From sequence record LR756502.1: a stretch of DNA of 64,000 nucleotides; one strand, written 5' to 3'. Shown one piece after another: positions 24,727 through 36,248 of this stretch (its first letter is position 1; every line of letters starts with the position of its first letter). Under the pieces are notes generated by a model, which was given only the letters and a program-made list of their open reading frames with translations, was not told the origin of the DNA and did not search any database. The position numbers were made by a program, and so were the translations under genes.

Positions 24727-25406
24727 TCTGAAATTTTATCAAACCACCAATTGAAGTATATGAAGTTATCTCCTACTAGGTTGTAGAGTTCATTATCATG
24801 TCTGATAACCATTTTTGTATCAAAGGATCTTACTAATTCTACTTCAGCTCCTTTGTCCATATTTAGCATTTTACCAGTATCTACACTATAACAGATAATA
24901 TCATTGTTTATTAATTTATATTTACCTTGTTCTGGTTTAAGCCAAGTTTTAATAACCTTTGCTATTAATCCTTTCGTTTTTATGACCCATTCTTTTGTCT
25001 GAAATAAATCTTTATCTTTAAATACCTCAGAGTGTACATCAGGGTATGTTAGTATATTTTTAATAACTGCCCAATATTCCTCCTCATCAATAACAAAAGA
25101 TACATAAGCATCATAGTTGATGTTATCAACCTTAACTATCCTTAGAACCTTCATACTTTTAATATTTTGGCTCTCTAATCCAATTTTGCTTCTTAGATTC
25201 TTATATGCGTTAGTTCCTGATATGTTAAATAGAATATCATCAATTCTAGACATGGCTTGTCTTAGACTGTCTTGGTGTTTATCAAATGCGTTTATGGATA
25301 ATTGTGGATCATCTACATGCATTGATGGTTGTACAGAATCAGCATTCATCCTTTGTAGGTTAAACTCGGTGAATTCTAATATTAATCTGCTTTTTCTATC
25401 TTTCAT
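24723..25406 (-). CDS. Hypothetical protein (late)
   Basis: 227 aa; RLILEFTEF; TAATATATA at 25416-25424. Confidence 0.75.
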   Translation of the reverse strand: MKDRKSRLILEFTEFNLQRMNADSVQPSMHVDDPQLSINAFDKHQDSLRQAMSRIDDILFNISGTNAYKNLRSKIGLESQNIKSMKVLRIVKVDNINYDAYVSFVIDEEEYWAVIKNILTYPDVHSEVFKDKDLFQTKEWVIKTKGLIAKVIKTWLKPEQGKYKLINNDIICYSVDTGKMLNMDKGAEVELVRSFDTKMVIRHDNELYNLVGDNFIYFNWWFDKISD

Positions 25407-25415
25407 ATATGAATA

Positions 25416-25424
25416 TATATATTA
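25416..25424 (-). promoter_or_regulatory. Putative late promoter TAATATATA
   Basis: Upstream of 25406. Confidence 0.7.
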
Positions 25425-25474
25425 AATAGTTACAACTATTTTATGCAAAAATCGTATAAAAAATAATATGTATT

Positions 25475-25786
25475 ATGAAGAAAATTAGAAAATTTAATGA
25501 ATCTGATGAGCAGGTAGATATTTCTGGTGAAAGAATTGATGAGATAATATCTGAACTAAAGGAGTTTGCCTCTTTGATAGATGCAAAAAGAGAAATGGTT
25601 GAGAGTCTATCAAATGAGATGAATAACTATAAGGGGTTATCAAAGAATGGTAATGACCAAATTGATGACTCTGTATCTAACCTACAATTGATTAAAAGCT
25701 ATATTGTTGATTGTAATGAAAAGATTGATAATGTTGTTAATAACATGAATGATTACAATGAAAATGGTAGAAAGTACTTATACTAA
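25475..25786 (+). CDS. Coiled-coil protein, CTS-like N-terminus
   Basis: MKKIRKFNES; heptad pattern. Confidence 0.7.
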   Translation: MKKIRKFNESDEQVDISGERIDEIISELKEFASLIDAKREMVESLSNEMNNYKGLSKNGNDQIDDSVSNLQLIKSYIVDCNEKIDNVVNNMNDYNENGRKYLY

Positions 25787-25830
25787 TAAACTTTAATTTT
25801 TACAAACAATATAAAAAATAAACTGGTAAC

Positions 25831-27756
25831 ATGAATTTACTGAATCTAATTAAGAAAAACTTTGAGTCTGAGATAAATGACTTATCTATTCAAGAGTATT
25901 TGAATATGTGTAAGAAGGACAAGAAGATATACTCATCTCCATCTGAGAGAATGTTAGAATCTATTGGTGAGCCTGAAGTAATAGAGACTGAGTTAGATGA
26001 AAGACTAAGCAGAATCTACTCAAATAAAATTATTAAAAGATATCCAGCTTTTGCTGAGTTCTATGGAATGGAAGAGACAATTGAACAGATTGTTTCATTC
26101 TTTAGACACGCGTCTCAGGGATTGGAGGAGAAGAAGCAAATACTTTACTTACTTGGTCCTGTTGGTGGTGGTAAGTCTTCACTGGCTGAGAGATTGAAGC
26201 AATTAATGGAGAGAAATTCAATCTATGTTCTTGTTTCTGACGCTGGTGAAGTTTCTCCTGTTTGGGAGAGTCCGCTTGGTTTATTTGTAAACTATAGAGC
26301 CGAATTAGAATCTGAGTATGGTATTGAAAAAAGATATATTCCTTCTTGTCCATCTCCTTGGGTCACAAAGAGATTACAAGAGTATAATGGTGATATAACA
26401 AAGTTTTCTGTTAGAAAAGTTAAGATGTCAATACAGTCACAAATTGGTATATCTAAAGTAGAACCAGGTGATGAGAATAATCAAGATATATCAGCACTTG
26501 TTGGTAAAGTAGATATTCGTAAACTTGCTGAGTTTCCACAAAATGATGCTGATGCTTATAATTACTCAGGATCTTTATGTAAGTCAAACCAAGGTCTTAT
26601 GGAGTTTGTTGAGATGTTTAAAGCACCTATAAAAGTATTACATCCTTTATTAACAGCTACTCAGGAGGGCAATTATAATGGAACTGAGGCTATACCAGCT
26701 ATTCCATTTCAGGGTATTATATTAGCCCACTCAAATGAGTCTGAGTGGGAGTCATTTTCTAATGATAAAAAGAATGAGGCTTTCCTTGATCGTGTTTATA
26801 TTGTAAGAGTTCCTTATTGTTTAAGAATTGCCGAGGAGGTTCAGATTTATAAAAAATTATTAAATAGCTCATCATTATCACAAGCTTCTTGTGCACCACA
26901 GACATTAGATTTACTAGCTCAGTTTTGTGTAATGACTAGAATGAAGAGACCGGAAAACTCATTATTATACTCTAAAATGAGGGTTTATAATGGTGAGAGT
27001 TTGAAGGAAAGTGATCCAAAGTCTAAATCACTACAAGAATATAAAGATGATGCTGGTATTGCTGAGGGTATGAATGGTATATCTACTAGATTTGCATTCA
27101 AAGTACTTTCTAAGGTATTTAATCATGATTCAGAAGAAGTAGCTGCTAATCCTGTACATTTATTCTATGTTCTTGAACAAGAAATTGTTAAGATACAAAT
27201 GCCAAAAGATGTTGAGGAGTACTATTTGAATATACTTAAGTCTACAATAACATCAAAATATGCTGATTTTATTGGAGATGAGATACAAAAGGCTTATGTT
27301 GATTCATATCAAGAGTATGGTCAAAATTTATTCGAAAGATATGTTACATACGCTGACCACTGGTGTCAAGATAATGATTTTCGTGATCCTGAAACTGCTC
27401 AGCAGTTTGATAGGGCTACTCTTAATGAAGAGTTGGAGAAAATTGAAAAACCAGCAGGTATTGCTAACCCAAAAGATTTCAGAAATGATGTTGTTCAATT
27501 TTATTTAAGACATAGAGCTAAAAATGGTAAATCTCCATCTTGGAATTCATATGAGAAAATTAAAAATGTAATAGAAAAAAGAATCTTCTCAAAAACAGAA
27601 GATCTTATTCCAGTTATATCGTTTACGAGTAAAGCATCAAAAGATGAAGAAAAGAAACATAGTGAGTTCATTAATAGAATGAAGGAAAGAGGATATACTA
27701 GAAAGCAAATAAAGTTACTTACTGATTGGTATTTAAGAATTAGAAAGTCATCCTAA
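25831..27756 (+). CDS. prkA: PrkA/YeaG family AAA+ protein (annotated serine kinase)
   Basis: YGMEETIEQIV, LLGPVGGGKSS, EPGDENNQDIS, EFVEMFKA, AHSNESEW, AFLDR. Confidence 0.95.
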   Translation: MNLLNLIKKNFESEINDLSIQEYLNMCKKDKKIYSSPSERMLESIGEPEVIETELDERLSRIYSNKIIKRYPAFAEFYGMEETIEQIVSFFRHASQGLEEKKQILYLLGPVGGGKSSLAERLKQLMERNSIYVLVSDAGEVSPVWESPLGLFVNYRAELESEYGIEKRYIPSCPSPWVTKRLQEYNGDITKFSVRKVKMSIQSQIGISKVEPGDENNQDISALVGKVDIRKLAEFPQNDADAYNYSGSLCKSNQGLMEFVEMFKAPIKVLHPLLTATQEGNYNGTEAIPAIPFQGIILAHSNESEWESFSNDKKNEAFLDRVYIVRVPYCLRIAEEVQIYKKLLNSSSLSQASCAPQTLDLLAQFCVMTRMKRPENSLLYSKMRVYNGESLKESDPKSKSLQEYKDDAGIAEGMNGISTRFAFKVLSKVFNHDSEEVAANPVHLFYVLEQEIVKIQMPKDVEEYYLNILKSTITSKYADFIGDEIQKAYVDSYQEYGQNLFERYVTYADHWCQDNDFRDPETAQQFDRATLNEELEKIEKPAGIANPKDFRNDVVQFYLRHRAKNGKSPSWNSYEKIKNVIEKRIFSKTEDLIPVISFTSKASKDEEKKHSEFINRMKERGYTRKQIKLLTDWYLRIRKSS

Positions 27757-27899
27757 TGACTCAATATTATTTAGATACTAGGGGTTATAAGAATATTTAT
27801 GGATACCCGGCTCTTTTTGCCTACTATACTAAGATAGATAGTAGAAGGAAAAAAATTAGAAAAATCAAAAAATTACTAGATGGGTATAAATATAGTTGA
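27756..27899 (+). CDS. 47-aa basic micro-protein (not in ORF track)
   Basis: TAATG overlap with prkA stop; MTQYYLDTRGYKNIYGYPALFAYYTKIDSRRKKIRKIKKLLDGYKYS. Confidence 0.55.
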   Translation: MTQYYLDTRGYKNIYGYPALFAYYTKIDSRRKKIRKIKKLLDGYKYS

Positions 27900-29142
27900 T
27901 AGAAGGAAGAACCCAAGTGGTAAGTCATCTAGTAATAGACAGAGGTTTCTGAAGAGAATAGAAGACCAGATCAAAAGGGCTCTTCCAGATATTGTTAAAA
28001 ATACAAGCGTTAAAGACTTAACATCATCTAAAGATAAAGTTAAGGTTCCTGTGAAGGGTATTGATGAGCCACAATTTACATATGATAGAGAGTCTGGTGA
28101 TAAAAAGTGGGTGCATCCTGGTAATAAAGAATACATACAAGGTGATACAATTGAGAAGAAGAAAAGCGGACAGGGTGGTAAGGGTCGAAAAGGATCAAAT
28201 GATCCATCAACATCAGAAGATGAGTTTAGTGTTTCTATATCAAGAGATGAGTTTCTTGACTACTTCTTTAAGGACCTAGAGCTACCAGACATGATTAAGA
28301 AACACCTTAATACAATCGTTAATTGGAAGCAAAAAAGAGCAGGATATTCACAGTATGGGAATCCAAGTAGATTAAATGTCGTTCGCTCTTATAAAAACTC
28401 TATGGCTAGAAAAATAGCATCACAGATATTTTTTGATAAGAAGATAAAGGAAATAGAAGATAAATTAAAAGATAATAGTTTATCAGATGATGATAGATTA
28501 AAATTAGAAACTGAATTGACCAAGTTCAAAAATATGAGACTGGCTGTTGGGTTTATGGAAGAGGTTGATCTTAGATATAATAATTTTGAGAAGTATCCTG
28601 TTCCTACCACATGCGCTGTTATGTTTTGTATAATGGACGTTTCTGGTTCAATGGGTGAGAAAGAGAAAGATATTGCTAAGAGATTCTTTATGTTACTCTA
28701 TATGTTTTTAACTAAACAGTATGAAAAGATTGAGATTGTCTTTATAAGACACCACACAGAAGCTAAGGAAGTTAGTGAAGATGAGTTTTTTAATTCACGA
28801 GAGTCTGGTGGAACTGTTGTAGTGCCTGCTCTTGAAATGATGAGTAAGATAATAAAAGAAAGATACTCAAAGGATTGGAATATCTATGCTGCTCAAGTAT
28901 CTGATGGTGATGTTTGGGATAAATCGGATGCTGATGACTGTTATAAGATATTAGATGCTGATATTCTAAATAAGATACAATATATGATATATATTGAGGT
29001 TTGTAGAACAAATGATGGTGACCTATGGGACAACTACGATGCTCTATCTCAGAAAAGAAATAACTTTCAGATTGGTAAAATTCATAGTGTTGGTCAGATA
29101 TGGACTGTATTTCAAGACTTCTTTAAAAAGAAAACCGCATAA
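27880..29142 (+). CDS. yeaH: YeaH/YhbH (DUF444) vWA-domain protein
   Basis: IVDRR..GKS..NRQRFL, HPGNKEY, FCIMDVSGSM (MIDAS DxSxS), FIRHHTEA, SGGTVV, QVSDGD. Confidence 0.93.
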   Translation: MGINIVDRRKNPSGKSSSNRQRFLKRIEDQIKRALPDIVKNTSVKDLTSSKDKVKVPVKGIDEPQFTYDRESGDKKWVHPGNKEYIQGDTIEKKKSGQGGKGRKGSNDPSTSEDEFSVSISRDEFLDYFFKDLELPDMIKKHLNTIVNWKQKRAGYSQYGNPSRLNVVRSYKNSMARKIASQIFFDKKIKEIEDKLKDNSLSDDDRLKLETELTKFKNMRLAVGFMEEVDLRYNNFEKYPVPTTCAVMFCIMDVSGSMGEKEKDIAKRFFMLLYMFLTKQYEKIEIVFIRHHTEAKEVSEDEFFNSRESGGTVVVPALEMMSKIIKERYSKDWNIYAAQVSDGDVWDKSDADDCYKILDADILNKIQYMIYIEVCRTNDGDLWDNYDALSQKRNNFQIGKIHSVGQIWTVFQDFFKKKTA

Positions 29143-29264
29143 TGGCCGTTTGTAGGATAATAGGTAGATTTATAAGGCCTGGATATACTCCAATGGATCC
29201 ACCTAAAAGAATTAAAAAACGACTAGGTAAAATCTATAAAATTTTAAAAATTATCAATAAATGA
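29142..29264 (+). CDS. 40-aa basic micro-protein with RxxKIxxIL tail (not in ORF track)
   Basis: TAATG overlap with yeaH stop and ATGA overlap with next gene; MAVCRIIGRFIRPGYTPMDPPKRIKKRLGKIYKILKIINK. Confidence 0.6.
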   Translation: MAVCRIIGRFIRPGYTPMDPPKRIKKRLGKIYKILKIINK

Positions 29265-29446
29265 AACCAGGAGTAATATTTGTCCCATACATTATTCAGC
29301 ACTTACCAGTGACCACTATTCAATGTGGTACATTTTCGCCTAATAAGACACTTCGTAGTAGATATTCAAGTATTTTTCTCAAGTCTAAAAACTTGATTAG
29401 AAAAGACAAAATAGAAAAGATATTAAATGAAAAACCCCTCGATTGA
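29261..29446 (+). CDS. 61-aa protein resembling the C-terminus of a T4-like major capsid protein, plus C-terminal tail
   Basis: PGVIFVPYI...GTFSPNKTLRSRY; IRKDKIEKIL. Confidence 0.6.
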   Translation: MKPGVIFVPYIIQHLPVTTIQCGTFSPNKTLRSRYSSIFLKSKNLIRKDKIEKILNEKPLD

Positions 29447-29454
29447 GGGGTTTT
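29431..29454. terminator. Bidirectional intrinsic terminator
   Basis: AAAACCCCTC-GATT-GAGGGGTTTT. Confidence 0.85.
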
Positions 29455-29456
29455 AT

Positions 29457-30005
29457 TTATTTATTAAATTTTAATTTGAATAGTGTTTTGTATGTAAGAG
29501 CTACAACCTCATCAATTATATTATGTAAGTGAGTATCTTCCTGTGATATACATTGTCTAGCACTTTTAATATAAGTTGCTAGTTCCTCAAAATAAGCCAC
29601 TTTATCTTTTGTCTTTGTTTCTTTTGTGTCAATAATATCATATCCATCAACAATACCATATTGTCCTTGGTATGTTTCGATTAACTCATCAATTAGTTCA
29701 AGTACATCTTCATAAAAAGTACCTAGTGCCATATGTGATGCATAAGATCCTTCATCTCCTCCAACTTGTAAGTGATAAATATGAGCCATCTCTCTAGATT
29801 CAAATAGCTTAGAGAATAGCTTAGTTGGATTACACTCAGAGCTTTGTTCAGATTCGGTATTTTCTGGTAGATTTGCCTTTGGTTCTTGATCCATGTTTGT
29901 CTTATCAACATCTTGTTGAGGTTGACCAAATTGATCCATCTCATTTATCTTTTTGATAATACCTTTTGGTACTTTAATGTCAGAGAACTTTTTGAATGAT
30001 GACAT
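29457..30005 (-). CDS. Ferritin/Dps-like four-helix protein (DUF5856-like)
   Basis: SREMAHIYHLQ, HMALGTFYE, IDELIETYQG, NIIDEVVAL. Confidence 0.75.
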   Translation of the reverse strand: MSSFKKFSDIKVPKGIIKKINEMDQFGQPQQDVDKTNMDQEPKANLPENTESEQSSECNPTKLFSKLFESREMAHIYHLQVGGDEGSYASHMALGTFYEDVLELIDELIETYQGQYGIVDGYDIIDTKETKTKDKVAYFEELATYIKSARQCISQEDTHLHNIIDEVVALTYKTLFKLKFNK

Positions 30006-34385: not shown

Positions 34386-36248
34386 ATGGGTATATTTAAG
34401 TATAATCAATTTATAGGAAAACCACTTACTGAGAATCTACAAGGGGCTAAAAAGCTAATGAAGGATAGATATTTGATGCTAAAATCAATAAAAGATCTAA
34501 ACCTTTTGACTGGTAAATTAAAACAGGAGTGGGATGATGGTGAAAGAAGATCATTTTCTCTTAAGGACTTTACCGAGGATCAACAAGATCTTATTAAGGC
34601 TAAATTCAGAGAGATAAAACTAACTGATGAAGAGGCTAGAAATATTGAAAAAGATCCTGGATTTATTAAGATAAGAGAGCTTGTAAAAGATACTTTGGGT
34701 TGGTGTTATATCTTTACATATTTCTACTATGTAGAAAATGTGCCATTTGAGGAACTAGAAGATATTTACAAGAAGTTGTTGGATTTTAGACCATTGTTGA
34801 GTAGATTACCTAAACCATTGGATAATAATTTCATAAATCCTAATATCAAAAATAACAATGAGGTTCTAGTTGATGAGTTGGAGAAAATTAACAGATATAG
34901 AAAGCTTAAGAGGTTTGTTGATGAACTTCCTGGTGATATGAGGAGAGAATTTGCTTCAACTTCAGAGCTTTATAAAGGAAAAATTGAGGATATAGCTGTT
35001 GCATTTGACGAGTTTGGTAAAAATGCAGAGACTGGTGTTGTTGATGAAAAAGAAAAATCTACACTACAAAAGTTATTCTTCTCTAAGATTAAAAGATATA
35101 AAGTTTTAAGAGAGGTTATACCACAAGCAGAGAACTATATTAAAGGATTGGATAATAAGAATGTTGTTAAATTCTATAAGGTAATTGAGAAGTGTAATGA
35201 AATGTTTGGTATTGTTGGTGCTGATATAGTATTTGATGAAAATGGTATACTAATACTTGATATTAAATCTTTCCAAGCTAATAAGATGTTAAATTCTAAT
35301 ACATCACATTGTATAGCTTCATATGATGGACATTGGTCCAGTTATGTTGGTACTGAGCAAGATAACAAATTTAATAAGCAATACTATATCTATAACTTTA
35401 ACTTATCATCTTCCGATAATAAGTCTATTATTGGTATAACAATTGAGCCAAATCAAAGAATAAATGCTTGTCATCTTAAAAATGACGCAGGATTTAGTGG
35501 TGATATAAGAAACTGCCTAAAGGGATGGGAAAGACAATATGATATAAAGGAAGATCTTTGGACTGTATTATCCCCTATGTCTGATGAAGACATAGCTAAG
35601 AAAAAGAGAAGAATTGCTGCTAATAGAGAAATCATAAAACCAAAAATAAAGTTGGATGAGATTCAAAAGTTGGTTAGAGAAGAAGGAGCTGATGTTAATA
35701 GAGAAAATGGTAAGCCATTGTTGAACGCTGTTCAGGAAGGAAGCTATGATAAGGTTAAATATCTACTAGAACTTGGAGCATCTCCTAATTTGAGACAAAA
35801 AGCAGAAGCAGTTATTAACCAAGCCAAGGACCTTGAAATGATTAAACTTTTGGTTAATAAGGGAGCTGAGTTGACGAGTCAAGTATTTAAGAATATTATG
35901 GAAGATAATTCAGCTGTTGAATATTGTTTACAAGCTGGTATGGATCCTAACTTTGAGAACTCATTGCCAGTAAGAACTTGTTGTAAACAAGGTAGTCTAG
36001 ATACACTTAAGTTACTTATTAAGTATGGTGCCCAAATTAAACATGCTAGAAATATGCCAATGGCTTGGGCAGCTGAGAATAATAGAAAGGACTTTATGGA
36101 GTATATGATAGGACTCGGTGTTGATACTGGATTCAGTTCTATAAAGAAATGGATTAGTCACACTACTAAGTTTGCTAAACCAGAAGATAAGAAAGAAATG
36201 ATGGACTATATAGATAAACTTATAGATTCAAAAAAAGTAACTGCGTAA
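34386..36248 (+). CDS. Ankyrin-repeat protein, CTS-like N-terminus
   Basis: GADVNRENGKPLLNAVQEGSYDKVKYLLELGASPN and further ankyrin-like units; central SHCIA motif. Confidence 0.8.
   Translation: MGIFKYNQFIGKPLTENLQGAKKLMKDRYLMLKSIKDLNLLTGKLKQEWDDGERRSFSLKDFTEDQQDLIKAKFREIKLTDEEARNIEKDPGFIKIRELVKDTLGWCYIFTYFYYVENVPFEELEDIYKKLLDFRPLLSRLPKPLDNNFINPNIKNNNEVLVDELEKINRYRKLKRFVDELPGDMRREFASTSELYKGKIEDIAVAFDEFGKNAETGVVDEKEKSTLQKLFFSKIKRYKVLREVIPQAENYIKGLDNKNVVKFYKVIEKCNEMFGIVGADIVFDENGILILDIKSFQANKMLNSNTSHCIASYDGHWSSYVGTEQDNKFNKQYYIYNFNLSSSDNKSIIGITIEPNQRINACHLKNDAGFSGDIRNCLKGWERQYDIKEDLWTVLSPMSDEDIAKKKRRIAANREIIKPKIKLDEIQKLVREEGADVNRENGKPLLNAVQEGSYDKVKYLLELGASPNLRQKAEAVINQAKDLEMIKLLVNKGAELTSQVFKNIMEDNSAVEYCLQAGMDPNFENSLPVRTCCKQGSLDTLKLLIKYGAQIKHARNMPMAWAAENNRKDFMEYMIGLGVDTGFSSIKKWISHTTKFAKPEDKKEMMDYIDKLIDSKKVTA

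What the first reader, a model, noticed from the sequence alone, without database searches (positions are those of the whole stretch)
25831..29142. Phage-encoded PrkA(YeaG)-YeaH AAA+/vWA module without SpoVR
Seen: intact prkA (Walker A GPVGGGKS) and yeaH (MIDAS DVSGS) with phage-like AT content and their own promoter site. No SpoVR/YcgB gene follows in the window. Established: bacteria usually keep yeaG-yeaH-ycgB together as a stress, starvation or sporulation module, and AAA+/vWA pairs act as remodelling chaperones. The N-terminus (IVDRR..GKS..NRQRFL) resembles E. coli-type YeaH. Inference: a captured chaperone or kinase repurposed to manipulate host dormancy or nitrogen-starvation physiology, or to remodel phage proteins.
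Basis: partly seen in the sequence, partly recalled or inferred. Interest (0 to 1): 0.68.

Follow-up and report, generated by a model that had tools for sequence, protein, structure and literature searches.

The report
Huge phage carries whole PrkA-YeaH-SpoVR module
A 642-kb lake phage carries intact, strongly conserved copies of the bacterial starvation genes prkA (yeaG) and yeaH, and the supposedly missing third gene spoVR sits 243 kb away in the same genome, so the phage has the whole module, possibly to break down host protein for its own growth.

Summary
The two genes are real and intact: prkA at 25831-27756 and yeaH at 27880-29142. The window is part of LR756502.1, a curated 642,428-bp huge phage from Lac Pavin. 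"Without SpoVR" is an effect of the window edge. An intact spoVR lies about 243 kb downstream in the same genome. Sister phages, Ralstonia phage RsoM2USA and 66 of 85 loci checked (80 IMG/VR loci plus the window's own and four metagenome contigs) carry the contiguous trio.

All three phage genes keep about 95% of the residues invariant in bacterial orthologues. They are under strong purifying selection (dN/dS about 0.04-0.12) and have phage-like GC content. Their nearest cellular kin are Cytophagales (Bacteroidota). SpoVR was found in only 4 of 300 other sampled Bacteroidota genomes.

The split arrangement recurs in 15 independently assembled contigs and resembles E. coli (yeaGH plus ycgB). 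The YeaH model has a vWA fold with a full MIDAS site. A model of a relative's SpoVR resembles zinc metallopeptidases, and one relative has a mini-intein in SpoVR's invariant NEG|C motif.

Best reading, which is inferred: the phage imports a complete starvation-type protein-turnover machine (YeaG is SpdA in a 2026 paper) to recycle host proteome. The genes were already auto-annotated in the 2020 supplement but were never discussed there.

The parts
25475..25786 (+). orf103, a small coiled-coil-like protein of unknown function. It is the first gene of the likely transcription unit, 44 bp upstream of prkA.
   Evidence: ORF, with only weak coiled-coil-type hits. A 102-aa counterpart sits in the same place in close relatives L102-L105. 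It is absent upstream of prkA in LR745206.1.
25831..27756 (+). prkA (yeaG/spdA type), a 641-aa AAA+ ATPase with a C-terminal PrkA pseudo-kinase-like domain.
   Evidence: PF08298 at 556.6 bits, PF06798 at 224.5 bits and NF011999 at 1105.6 bits. phrog_22605 at 724 bits. 262 of 276 bacterially invariant columns are kept. dN/dS is 0.04-0.07.
26155..26178 (+). Walker A / P-loop GPVGGGKS (PrkA residues 109-116).
   Evidence: It aligns with GPVGSAKS of PDB 9xip. The equivalent Lys (K108) is required in B. subtilis PrkA (PMC9512850).
27757..27879 (+). A 123-bp prkA-yeaH spacer. Close relatives carry a GIY-YIG homing endonuclease plus a 68-aa ORF at this position.
   Evidence: Sequence. L102/L103 have a 1369-bp gap holding a GIY-YIG/NUMOD1 gene.
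27880..29142 (+). yeaH (DUF444), 420 aa. It has a conserved basic N-terminal region, a long helical hairpin and a C-terminal vWA domain.
   Evidence: PF04285 at 490.5 bits and NF003707 at 527.5 bits. The model has pLDDT 80-94 over residues 150-420, and 155 PDB vWA matches have E <= 1e-3. 71 of 75 invariant columns are kept.
28636..28650 (+). MIDAS motif DVSGS (YeaH residues 253-257). The remaining ligands are T312 (28813-28815) and D342 (28903-28905).
   Evidence: D253, S255, S257, T312 and D342 are invariant in a 31-sequence alignment.
29142..29264 (+). orf40, a 40-aa ORF whose ATG overlaps the yeaH stop (TAATG). It carries RLGKIYKIL near its C-terminus.
   Evidence: It was also called as a gene in the public gene call. 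No homologue was found in the loci held, so its reality is unproven.
29261..29446 (+). orf61, a 61-aa ORF overlapping the orf40 stop (ATGA). It carries RKDKIEKIL near its C-terminus and occupies the slot where relatives have spoVR.
   Evidence: It is conserved right after yeaH in L102 (75 aa) and L103 (63 aa).
29431..29464 (+). Intrinsic-terminator-like hairpin (10-bp stem with 5 GC pairs, 4-nt loop, T-rich tail). It is the likely end of the orf103-prkA-yeaH-orf40-orf61 unit and faces a convergent gene.
   Evidence: sequence. The next gene (29457-30005) is on the minus strand.

Best explanation
Shown:
- The window is part of a complete 642-kb huge phage, LP_PHAGE_COMPLETE_CIR-CU-CL_31_18 from Lac Pavin, with a predicted Bacteroidota host.
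- The phage encodes all three members of the bacterial PrkA/YeaG-YeaH-SpoVR/YcgB module.
- prkA and yeaH form one transcription-unit-like block with three small ORFs and a terminator. spoVR was moved about 243 kb away by a rearrangement whose breakpoint lies at the 3' end of yeaH.
- The trio is old in this phage lineage, is kept under strong purifying selection, and is biochemically undisturbed: about 95% of bacterially invariant residues are retained, along with an intact Walker A and a full MIDAS site.

Inferred:
- The three proteins do in the infected cell what they do in bacteria. [quoted passage not shown]
- PrkA would be the hexameric AAA+ motor. YeaH would be a MIDAS/vWA adaptor, with a role analogous to Rpn10 or NorD. 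SpoVR, whose model resembles gluzincin metallopeptidases, would be the candidate hydrolytic or substrate-handling subunit.
- Expressed from phage signals rather than a host stress sigma factor, the module would turn host protein into amino acids and energy for a very large, slow-growing phage.
- Most Bacteroidota appear to lack the module, so the phage must bring all three parts.
For: Identity and context:
- 100% match to LR756502.1. The genome is listed as complete, circular and curated, with a predicted Bacteroidetes host.
- Neighbours are ThyA, PolB, helicases, RNR, a RecA-like gene and ORFans.

All three genes are present:
-.
- All five PrkA-bearing large phages checked carry all three families.
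- 66 of 85 loci checked show the trio within 16 kb. These were 80 IMG/VR loci plus the window's own locus and four metagenome contigs.
- At least 120 clusters of 639-656 aa (nearly all 640-641) at 83-93% identity lie on contigs of up to 634 kb.

Function is retained:
- dN/dS is 0.04-0.12 with dS saturated.
- 262/276, 71/75 and 139/147 invariant columns are kept in PrkA, YeaH and SpoVR.
- GC3 is 0.23-0.31, against 0.42-0.82 in the nearest bacterial orthologues.

Common origin of the three genes:
- Single-gene and concatenated trees place the phage clade with Cytophagales, with support of 93-99.

The module is rare in the host phylum:
- SpoVR was found in 4 of 300 other sampled Bacteroidota genomes, and those copies are of a distant type.

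Folds:
- YeaH has a vWA fold.
- For the SpoVR model, about 45 of the top 50 VIA-align hits are MA-clan zinc peptidases, Z 6.2-12.5.
- A mini-intein splits the invariant NEG|C motif in LR756504.1.

Literature:
- yeaG, yeaH and ycgB are mutually cofit in six bacteria (10.1101/072470).
- YeaG is required for starvation-induced bulk proteolysis, which supplies amino acids and ATP (PMC13684143).
- PrkA is a clade III AAA+ protein with a pore loop (PMC13001217).
Against: - No expression or infection data.
- PrkA biochemistry is contested. B. subtilis PrkA showed weak ATP-dependent casein cleavage, but purified B. anthracis PrkA showed none.
- The SPD paper shows a genetic requirement for YeaG only and does not mention YeaH or YcgB.
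- SpoVR lacks a canonical HExxH. Foldseek found no PDB match. Z of 8-12.5 is within the range helical models can reach by chance (note).
- The SpoVR model is of a 79%-identical relative, not the window phage's own protein.
- Mutant phenotypes of the trio differ between bacteria, so a regulatory role is equally compatible.
- The host is unknown and could itself carry the module.
Confidence: 0.42

Rival explanations
1. Signalling or dormancy control. The trio acts as a regulatory device rather than a bulk degradation machine. The phage would use it to push the host into, or hold it out of, a stationary-phase or nitrogen-starvation-like state. Targeted removal or modification of a few regulators would keep a slow-growing host productive through a long infection. 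This is closest to the first reader's idea.
For: - Price et al. interpret the trio as a conserved signalling pathway with species-specific phenotypes.
- PrkA affects sporulation gene expression and osmotic stress survival in Bacillus without detectable protease activity.
- yeaGH is tied to the NtrBC and RpoS regulons.
- In this phage, spoVR sits 40 bp upstream of a glutamate-synthase-like gene.
Against: - Kinase activity is not supported for PrkA in two studies.
- The only quantitative physiology links YeaG to non-specific turnover of a large share of cytoplasmic protein.
- A SpoVR peptidase-like fold and a vWA adaptor fit a degradation machine better than a signalling relay.
Confidence: 0.27
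2. Phage-protein remodelling chaperone. PrkA and YeaH would act like MoxR-vWA pairs (RavA-ViaA, NorQ-NorD, CbbQ-CbbO). They would mature or assemble a phage or host complex, for example by metal-cofactor insertion or virion assembly.
For: - YeaH's vWA model matches NorD (NorQD complex) and Rea1-MIDAS among many vWA domains.
- The AAA+ plus vWA pairing and the conserved MIDAS site fit this pattern.
Against: - PrkA is not a MoxR-type ATPase. The AAA_5 hit is 19.9 bits, below its cut-off of 22, and only PrkA-specific models score.
- No structural or assembly genes lie nearby; the neighbourhood is replication and nucleotide metabolism.
- The module is retained unchanged from bacteria that have no phage client.
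- SpoVR co-retention is unexplained by this reading.
Confidence: 0.1
3. Passenger DNA or an artefact. The genes would be a recent, selectively neutral capture of host DNA, a mis-binned bacterial fragment or an assembly chimera. On this reading the apparent loss of SpoVR would signal decay.
For: - The proteins are 65-68% identical to bacterial PrkA.
- Some IMG/VR 'viral' contigs with high GC look bacterial, e.g. L134 with GC 0.60 nested in Gammaproteobacteria, and L124/L126.
Against: - GC and GC3 match the phage, not any bacterial orthologue.
- The same phage-specific flanks recur in 15 contigs from ENA, JGI and Logan samples and in a curated closed genome.
- All three ORFs are intact, with dN/dS well below 1.
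- The clade has diversified to 83-93% identity across at least 120 clusters.
Confidence: 0.03

Closest known systems
E. coli yeaG(spdA)-yeaH operon plus unlinked ycgB
   Same: - The same three families are present, each above the curated cut-offs.
- The gene order is the same, prkA then yeaH.
- As in E. coli, the third gene (spoVR/ycgB) is encoded elsewhere in the genome.
- PrkA is 65% identical to enterobacterial YeaG.
   Different: - The module is carried by a phage.
- Its nearest cellular kin are Cytophagales, not Enterobacteriaceae.
- No RpoS or NtrC control can be assumed.
- Three small phage-specific ORFs are co-oriented with it.
- The phage SpoVR has Cys instead of Trp in the NEG-x-A motif.
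Contiguous prkA-yeaH-spoVR trio of other large phages
   Same: - The examples are LR745206.1, LR756504.1, LR756511.1, Ralstonia jumbo phage RsoM2USA ORF30-28 and many IMG/VR contigs.
- They carry the same three genes in the same order.
- The close relatives are 84% (PrkA), 75% (YeaH) and 79% (SpoVR) identical to the window phage.
- PHROGs already holds phage families for PrkA and YeaH.
   Different: - In the window's sub-lineage spoVR has been moved about 243 kb away, and orf40/orf61 follow yeaH instead.
- Relatives show other disruptions of the operon: a GIY-YIG endonuclease, two DNA methylases and a mini-intein.
Bacillus PrkA-YhbH-SpoVR sporulation genes and Thermus-phage 'serine kinase' (phiYS40, TMA)
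   Same: The family and domain architecture are the same. Walker A is required for function in B. subtilis.
   Different: - Identity is only about 26%. The YhbH model TIGR02877 scores 224.8, below its cut-off of 468.
- The window genes are of the Gram-negative YeaG/YeaH type.
- No link to sporulation is expected in a Bacteroidota host.
FtsH/Yme1 (AAA+ fused to an M41 zinc protease) and the 26S proteasome Rpn10 vWA receptor
   Same: - This is an analogy of parts only: a classic-clade AAA+ motor with a pore loop, a vWA domain and an MA-clan-like peptidase fold.
   Different: - No sequence-level membership is shown.
- The parts are three separate proteins.
- SpoVR lacks HExxH.
- Neither a physical complex nor protease activity has been shown.

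Membership tests
PrkA/YeaG family (PF08298 + PF06798; NCBIfam NF011999) | Both Pfam domains and the equivalog model score above their curated cut-offs over the full length | tested here: met
   PF08298 scores 556.6 (cut-off 25), PF06798 scores 224.5 (cut-off 25), and NF011999 scores 1105.6 (cut-off 576) over residues 2-641.
PrkA/YeaG family (PF08298 + PF06798; NCBIfam NF011999) | Intact Walker A P-loop and retention of family-invariant residues | tested here: met
   GPVGGGKS is at residues 109-116. 262 of 276 columns invariant in 34 bacterial orthologues are kept, and the changes are conservative.
PrkA/YeaG family (PF08298 + PF06798; NCBIfam NF011999) | ATPase activity and ATP-dependent oligomerisation | not testable with these tools
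   Needs purified protein.
YeaH / DUF444 (PF04285; NF003707) | Full-length HMM match above the cut-off | tested here: met
   PF04285 scores 490.5 over residues 5-418, and NF003707 scores 527.5 (cut-off 396).
YeaH / DUF444 (PF04285; NF003707) | C-terminal vWA fold with a complete MIDAS site (DxSxS...T...D) | tested here: met
   The model has pLDDT 80-94 over residues 150-420. 155 PDB matches at E <= 1e-3 are vWA domains. D253, S255, S257, T312 and D342 are invariant.
Three-gene yeaG-yeaH-ycgB (prkA-yhbH-spoVR) module | All three genes are present in one genome | tested here: met
   SpoVR (PF04293, 524.7 bits) is an intact 499-aa ORF at LR756502.1 519,947-521,446.
Three-gene yeaG-yeaH-ycgB (prkA-yhbH-spoVR) module | The three genes are adjacent in one operon, the usual bacterial arrangement | tested here: not met
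   spoVR is about 243 kb from yeaH. DNA homology with LR745206.1 ends at window position ~29133. The same kind of split is seen in Enterobacteriaceae, so adjacency is typical but not defining.
Three-gene yeaG-yeaH-ycgB (prkA-yhbH-spoVR) module | The three products act together (cofitness or physical complex) | not testable with these tools
Only bacterial cofitness from the literature is available.
   AAA_5 scores 19.9 bits, below its cut-off of 22. There is no MoxR-type hit, and only PrkA-specific models pass.
Lon-type AAA+ protease (proposed for B. subtilis PrkA) | Match to Lon models, including the protease domain | tested here: not met
   TIGR00763 (lon) scores 16.3 bits against a cut-off of 608, and only over the P-loop region, residues 76-131.
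Gluzincin / MA-clan zinc metallopeptidase (for SpoVR) | Thermolysin-like catalytic-domain fold | tested here: inconclusive
   VIA-align gives Z 6.2-12.5 with 167-217 residues aligned, and about 45 of the top 50 hits are MA-clan peptidases. Foldseek found nothing at E <= 1e-3, and helical models can reach such Z by chance. The model is of a 79%-identical relative.
Gluzincin / MA-clan zinc metallopeptidase (for SpoVR) | HExxH zinc-binding motif plus a downstream Glu ligand (NExxA-type helix) | tested here: not met
   No HExxH is seen among the invariant columns. Invariant H118-x4-H123 and N277-E278-G279-x-A281...H285 are present, and only the latter resembles the gluzincin Glu helix.

The most novel reading that the evidence does not exclude
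The PrkA-YeaH-SpoVR trio is a portable, self-sufficient bulk-proteolysis machine: an AAA+ unfoldase, a MIDAS adaptor and a non-canonical gluzincin-like peptidase. Several unrelated lineages of huge and jumbo phages have acquired it. They would use it to digest the host's cytoplasmic proteome into amino acids and energy, a protein counterpart to phage-driven host DNA degradation. This would matter most in hosts that lack the module. The intein at NEG|C would mark SpoVR's active site.
Probability: 0.22. Interest if true: 0.85.

Novelty: new member of a known kind. Interest (0 to 1): 0.55.

Why it matters
The trio is among the most widely conserved and least understood stress modules in bacteria. 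Only in late 2026 was YeaG tied to starvation-induced bulk proteolysis. This work shows three things about it:
- Complete, strongly constrained copies sit in several lineages of huge phages. At least 132 IMG/VR contigs carry a PrkA relative, as do cultivable phages such as RsoM2USA and the Thermus phages.
- All three genes travel together even when they are physically split.
- Most members of the likely host phylum lack them.

This gives a natural test bed. A phage-borne module must work without host stress regulation, so heterologous expression of a phage trio could show what the three proteins do together.

The peptidase-like SpoVR fold and the intein position point to specific residues to mutate. 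If the recycling idea holds, it would add protein catabolism to the known list of phage auxiliary functions.

Tried and rejected
Tool steps that gave nothing:
No binding evidence either way was obtained.
I did not resend it and modelled the 79%-identical IMG/VR relative L110 instead.
- Foldseek against PDB gave no SpoVR match.
- The ESM Atlas gave no usable hit.
- A permissive Pfam scan of SpoVR showed only SpoVR and SpoVR_C.
- A PDB sequence search found nothing for YeaH or SpoVR.
- The whole-window Rfam and tRNA scans were empty.
- The literature search 'YeaG + cryo-EM' was swamped by the author name Yeager.
- Searches for DUF444 with phage, and PrkA with YS40, found no discussion of the phage trio.

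Sequence signals that did not hold up:
- The sigma-70 promoter scan was at or below the chance level.
- The A-rich motif upstream of prkA and orf103 is not enriched overall.

Readings considered and rejected:
- Contamination or chimera.
- An alternative genetic code. All ORFs are open under table 11.
- A Lon-type protease identity for PrkA.
- A remnant of spoVR hidden in 29143-29460. No similarity was found.

Not resolved: the direction of transfer between phages and Cytophagales. In the unrooted concatenated tree the Cytophagales sit among long-branched phage rows.


Full report
**1. What is at the coordinates**

Under table 11 the + strand carries two uninterrupted ORFs, 25831-27756 (641 aa) and 27880-29142 (420 aa).

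The first ORF is a PrkA/YeaG gene:
- PF08298 (AAA_PrkA) scores 556.6 bits and PF06798 (PrkA C-terminal domain) scores 224.5 bits.
- The NCBIfam equivalog NF011999 scores 1105.6 bits against a cut-off of 576.

The second ORF is a YeaH gene:
- PF04285/DUF444 matches end to end at 490.5 bits.
- NF003707 scores 527.5 bits against a cut-off of 396.

Walker A GPVGGGKS is at PrkA 109-116. DVSGS is at YeaH 253-257. IVDRR and NRQRFL are at the YeaH N-terminus. The short minus-strand ORFs inside both genes have no support. No tRNA or Rfam family lies in the window.

**2. Where the window comes from**

Bases 25000-30000 are 100% identical to LR756502.1, positions 273000-278000. Window position therefore equals record position minus 248,000.

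The supplement of Al-Shayeb et al. 2020 (PMC7162821) lists this 642,428-bp record as LP_PHAGE_COMPLETE_CIR-CU-CL_31_18 from Lac Pavin. It is one of the four largest manually curated circular phage genomes, and its predicted host is in the Bacteroidetes.

The authors' GenBank file already labels gene 273831..275756 'PrkA family serine protein kinase (Pontibacter sp.)'. PrkA and SpoVR hits appear in their annotation tables for several other huge phages. The main text never mentions them.

The rest of the window holds thymidylate synthase, a PolB-like gene, two helicases, the ribonucleotide reductase large subunit, a RecA-like gene, an ankyrin protein and many ORFans. This is a replication and nucleotide-supply neighbourhood.

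**3. SpoVR is not missing**

A whole-record search with PF04293 finds one intact SpoVR gene in LR756502.1. It scores 524.7 bits, has no internal stops and encodes a 499-aa ORF at record 519,947-521,446. That is about 243 kb beyond yeaH.

The arrangement in other large phages:
- In the sister genome LR745206.1 (PrkA 84%, YeaH 75%, SpoVR 79% identical) the three genes are contiguous.
- LR756504.1, LR756511.1 and the cultured Ralstonia jumbo phage RsoM2USA (ORF30-29-28) also carry all three genes in the same order. Only the RsoM2USA PrkA and SpoVR were named in that paper's table.

I classified 85 loci: 80 IMG/VR loci holding a PrkA relative, the window's own locus and four metagenome contigs.
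- 66 show prkA, yeaH and spoVR in order, and in most of these the genes are adjacent.
- 13 are cut off too early to tell.
- 6 lack spoVR within at least 2 kb after yeaH. These are the window's own locus and two contigs of its sub-lineage, one 70%-identical contig (L122), and two higher-GC contigs that look enterobacterial.

The split is not an assembly error. A 91%-identical PrkA (P0006) lies on 15 contigs from ENA, JGI and Logan samples. The places shown that extend far enough have the same flanks: orf102, prkA, yeaH, a small ORF, then a convergent DUF5856 gene, with no spoVR.

DNA similarity between LR756502.1 and LR745206.1 stops at window position ~29133, the last codons of yeaH. The genes upstream of the relocated spoVR are syntenic with the region that lies downstream of the trio in LR745206.1. 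A rearrangement therefore broke the operon exactly between yeaH and spoVR.

The same split exists in Enterobacteriaceae. Six enterobacterial loci have no spoVR within 5 kb of yeaH. Price et al. state that the three genes form one operon in most bacteria but two operons in E. coli, yeaGH and ycgB.

**4. Evolution**

The genes are long-term residents under constraint.
- Against relatives, prkA has dN 0.06-0.11 and yeaH has dN 0.11-0.18. dS is above 1.4, so dN/dS is 0.04-0.12.
- For spoVR dS is too saturated to compute, and dN is 0.15-0.18.
- Of the columns invariant in 30-34 Bacteroidota and Gammaproteobacteria orthologues, the phage proteins keep 262/276 (PrkA), 71/75 (YeaH) and 139/147 (SpoVR).
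- GC is 0.33-0.34 and GC3 is 0.23-0.31. The nearest bacterial orthologues have GC 0.40-0.59.

The word-index search returned 119 clusters of 639-656 aa (nearly all 640-641) at 83-93% identity, plus one 910-aa Salmonella protein at 69%. Some of the clusters lie on contigs of 522-634 kb. The gene is therefore standard equipment in this phage group.

The nearest cellular relatives of all three genes are Cytophagales (Flammeovirgaceae, Rapidithrix, Rhodocytophaga, Tunicatimonas).

| Protein | Identity to Cytophagales | Identity to Gammaproteobacteria |
|---|---|---|
| PrkA | 67-68% | 65-67% |
| YeaH | 52-55% | 40-45% |
| SpoVR | 58-61% | 50-56% |

Trees agree with them:
- The single-gene quick trees group the phages with Bacteroidota, with SH-aLRT support of 93-96.
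- The concatenated tree gives 98-99.

So the distant spoVR shares its history with prkA-yeaH. That fits one acquisition followed by a later split.

Two caveats apply:
- These are quick searches with long phage branches, and the sampling was limited to the 80 best PrkA hits.
- In the unrooted concatenated tree, Cytophagales sit among successive phage branches, so the direction of transfer is open.

A second large viral group (contigs up to 342 kb) forms its own clade next to Pseudomonadota. RsoM2USA, and LR756511.1 with the Thermus phages, are further separate lineages. Phages have therefore taken up, or exchanged, this trio more than once.

In an even sample of 300 other Bacteroidota genomes, SpoVR was found in only 4, and with much lower scores. 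Most potential hosts would not supply any missing partner.

**5. Anatomy of the locus**

orf103 (25475-25786) lies 44 bp upstream of prkA and is conserved in close relatives. It follows a divergent intergenic region.

After yeaH come two tiny overlapping ORFs:
- orf40 (29142-29264) shares a TAATG overlap with the yeaH stop.
- orf61 (29261-29446) shares an ATGA overlap with the orf40 stop.
- orf61 has clear homologues right after yeaH in L102 and L103.
- Both peptides carry RxxKIxxIL near the C-terminus.

A strong terminator-like hairpin at 29431-29454 closes the block against a convergent gene.

The 123-bp prkA-yeaH spacer is the place where relatives carry a GIY-YIG/NUMOD1 homing endonuclease.
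- LR756504.1 has two DNA methylase genes between yeaH and spoVR.
- Two IMG/VR relatives have inserts of 1.1-1.6 kb at the same junction.

The trio's junctions are thus repeated targets of mobile elements, which offers a route to the break-up seen here.

The claim of a dedicated promoter is not supported. Sigma-70-type matches are no more frequent than in shuffles. The A-rich motif 8-9 nt upstream of the orf103 and prkA start codons is not enriched overall.

**6. Folds**

*YeaH.* A model built from 31 homologues is confident over residues 150-420 (pLDDT 80-94). It matches 155 PDB chains at E <= 1e-3, all vWA domains. Examples are C2a, CMG2, proteasomal Rpn10, Rea1-MIDAS and NorD. All five MIDAS ligands are invariant. 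The conserved basic N-terminal 145 residues are modelled poorly, as expected for a segment that folds on a partner.

*PrkA.* It has one solved relative, PDB 9xip/9xiq/9xir (E 2e-51), aligned over residues 76-606.

- Foldseek found nothing.
- The exhaustive VIA-align search returned, in about 45 of its top 50 rows, catalytic domains of MA-clan zinc metallopeptidases.
- These include DUF885 at Z 12.5, M1 aminopeptidases and LTA4H at about Z 10, and M3, M32, M2, thermolysin/LasB, M49, M61 and M9.
- The tool warns that helical models can reach such Z values by chance, so this is a lead and not a proof.

SpoVR has an invariant N277-E278-G279-x-A281...H285 that recalls the gluzincin 'NEGxA' glutamate helix. 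It has no HExxH.

Independent support for the importance of that motif comes from LR756504.1. Its SpoVR carries a mini-intein of about 129 aa. The intein starts with Cys, ends with His-Asn and is followed by Cys. It is inserted exactly between G279 and residue 280. Inteins typically sit in the most constrained functional sites.

The huge-phage SpoVRs without the intein have Cys at residue 280, where the bacterial consensus has Trp. This is consistent with past intein occupancy.

**7. How it most likely works**

Established from the literature:
- PrkA is a clade III AAA+ protein with a pore loop and a degenerate kinase-like domain. No kinase activity was found, and protease activity is weak (B. 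subtilis) or absent (B. anthracis) for PrkA alone.
- E. coli YeaG, renamed SpdA, is required for starvation-induced, largely non-specific degradation of cytoplasmic proteins. That degradation supplies amino acids and ATP for new synthesis.

Inference: the phage trio is unchanged at nearly every invariant position and is kept complete, so it should perform the same reaction in the infected cell. PrkA would be the motor and YeaH the MIDAS adaptor. SpoVR would be the best candidate for the missing hydrolytic partner, which would also explain why PrkA alone is a poor protease.

For a 642-kb phage in a nutrient-poor lake, converting host protein into precursors parallels the nucleotide-supply genes next to it. 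In this genome spoVR now sits 40 bp upstream of a glutamate-synthase-like gene (PF01645, 293 bits). It lies downstream of an SprB/CHU_C type IX secretion cargo gene, which is a hallmark of a Bacteroidota host.

I give this reading about 0.4.
- The main rival is a regulatory or dormancy-control role, at about 0.27.
- A MoxR-like chaperone role is at about 0.1. It fails the membership test for the ATPase.
- Passenger DNA or an artefact is at about 0.03. It is contradicted.

**8. Novelty and limits**

Phage-borne PrkA, YeaH and SpoVR are already in databases: PHROGs families, the automatic annotation in the 2020 supplement and the RsoM2USA table. This is a new member of a known kind, and the headline 'without SpoVR' is wrong at genome level.

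The following appear not to have been discussed in the papers searched:
- the breadth and constraint of the complete trio in huge phages;
- its rarity in the host phylum;
- the common origin of the split genes;
- the peptidase-like SpoVR fold and the intein at NEG|C.

Not done: expression or coverage, complex prediction, modelling of the phage's own SpoVR, and any biochemical test.

Noticed in passing
L010 14468-16375 (LR756504.1 SpoVR): SpoVR of this 636-kb relative carries a mini-intein of about 129 aa (Cys start, His-Asn end, +1 Cys). It is inserted exactly inside the invariant NEG|CATF motif. Intein-free huge-phage SpoVRs have Cys where the bacterial consensus has Trp.
   Followed up: partly
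L006 13488-15008 and 6379-11391 (LR756502.1 521,487-523,007 and 514,378-519,390): The relocated spoVR is followed after 40 bp by a 506-aa glutamate-synthase-like gene (PF01645). It is preceded by a 1670-aa SprB-repeat protein with a CHU_C type IX secretion signal, a Bacteroidota hallmark that supports the predicted host. A rhomboid protease and a NIF phosphatase lie nearby.
   Followed up: partly
window 29142-29446: Two tiny overlapping ORFs (40 and 61 aa) follow yeaH. Both have RxxKIxxIL near the C-terminus. orf61 is conserved after yeaH in close relatives. Function is unknown.
   Followed up: partly
L102 9942-11106; L103 3081-4245 (relatives of window 27757-27879): Close relatives carry a GIY-YIG/NUMOD1 homing endonuclease plus a 68-aa proline-run ORF between prkA and yeaH. 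The window has only a 123-bp spacer there.
   Followed up: partly
L010 12516-14200: LR756504.1 has two tandem N6/N4 DNA methylase genes inserted between yeaH and spoVR. It also has two unknown ORFs between prkA and yeaH.
   Followed up: no
window 5823, 12751, 25454, 25809, 30018(-), 31617(-), 41011(-), 62491: An A-rich motif close to TATAAAAAATAA lies roughly 10-30 nt upstream of start codons in about half of its 19 matches. It resembles the T4 late promoter or a Bacteroidota-type A-rich initiation region. It is not enriched overall against shuffles.
   Followed up: partly
L140, L143, L152, L175, L130, L150, L184 (IMG/VR contigs up to 342 kb): A second, deep viral clade carries the contiguous trio (PrkA 60-63% identical to the window's, GC mostly 0.34-0.46, one contig 0.52). 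It branches beside Pseudomonadota, which suggests a separate phage lineage holds the same module.
   Followed up: partly
window 34386-36248: A 620-aa protein with C-terminal ankyrin repeats lies in the phage replication region and is conserved in close relatives.
   Followed up: no
MN688132.1 1-1932 (Enterobacter phage LAU1): This 30.8-kb record starts with a full YeaG gene at position 1. It looks like flanking host DNA of a prophage rather than a phage gene.
   Followed up: no
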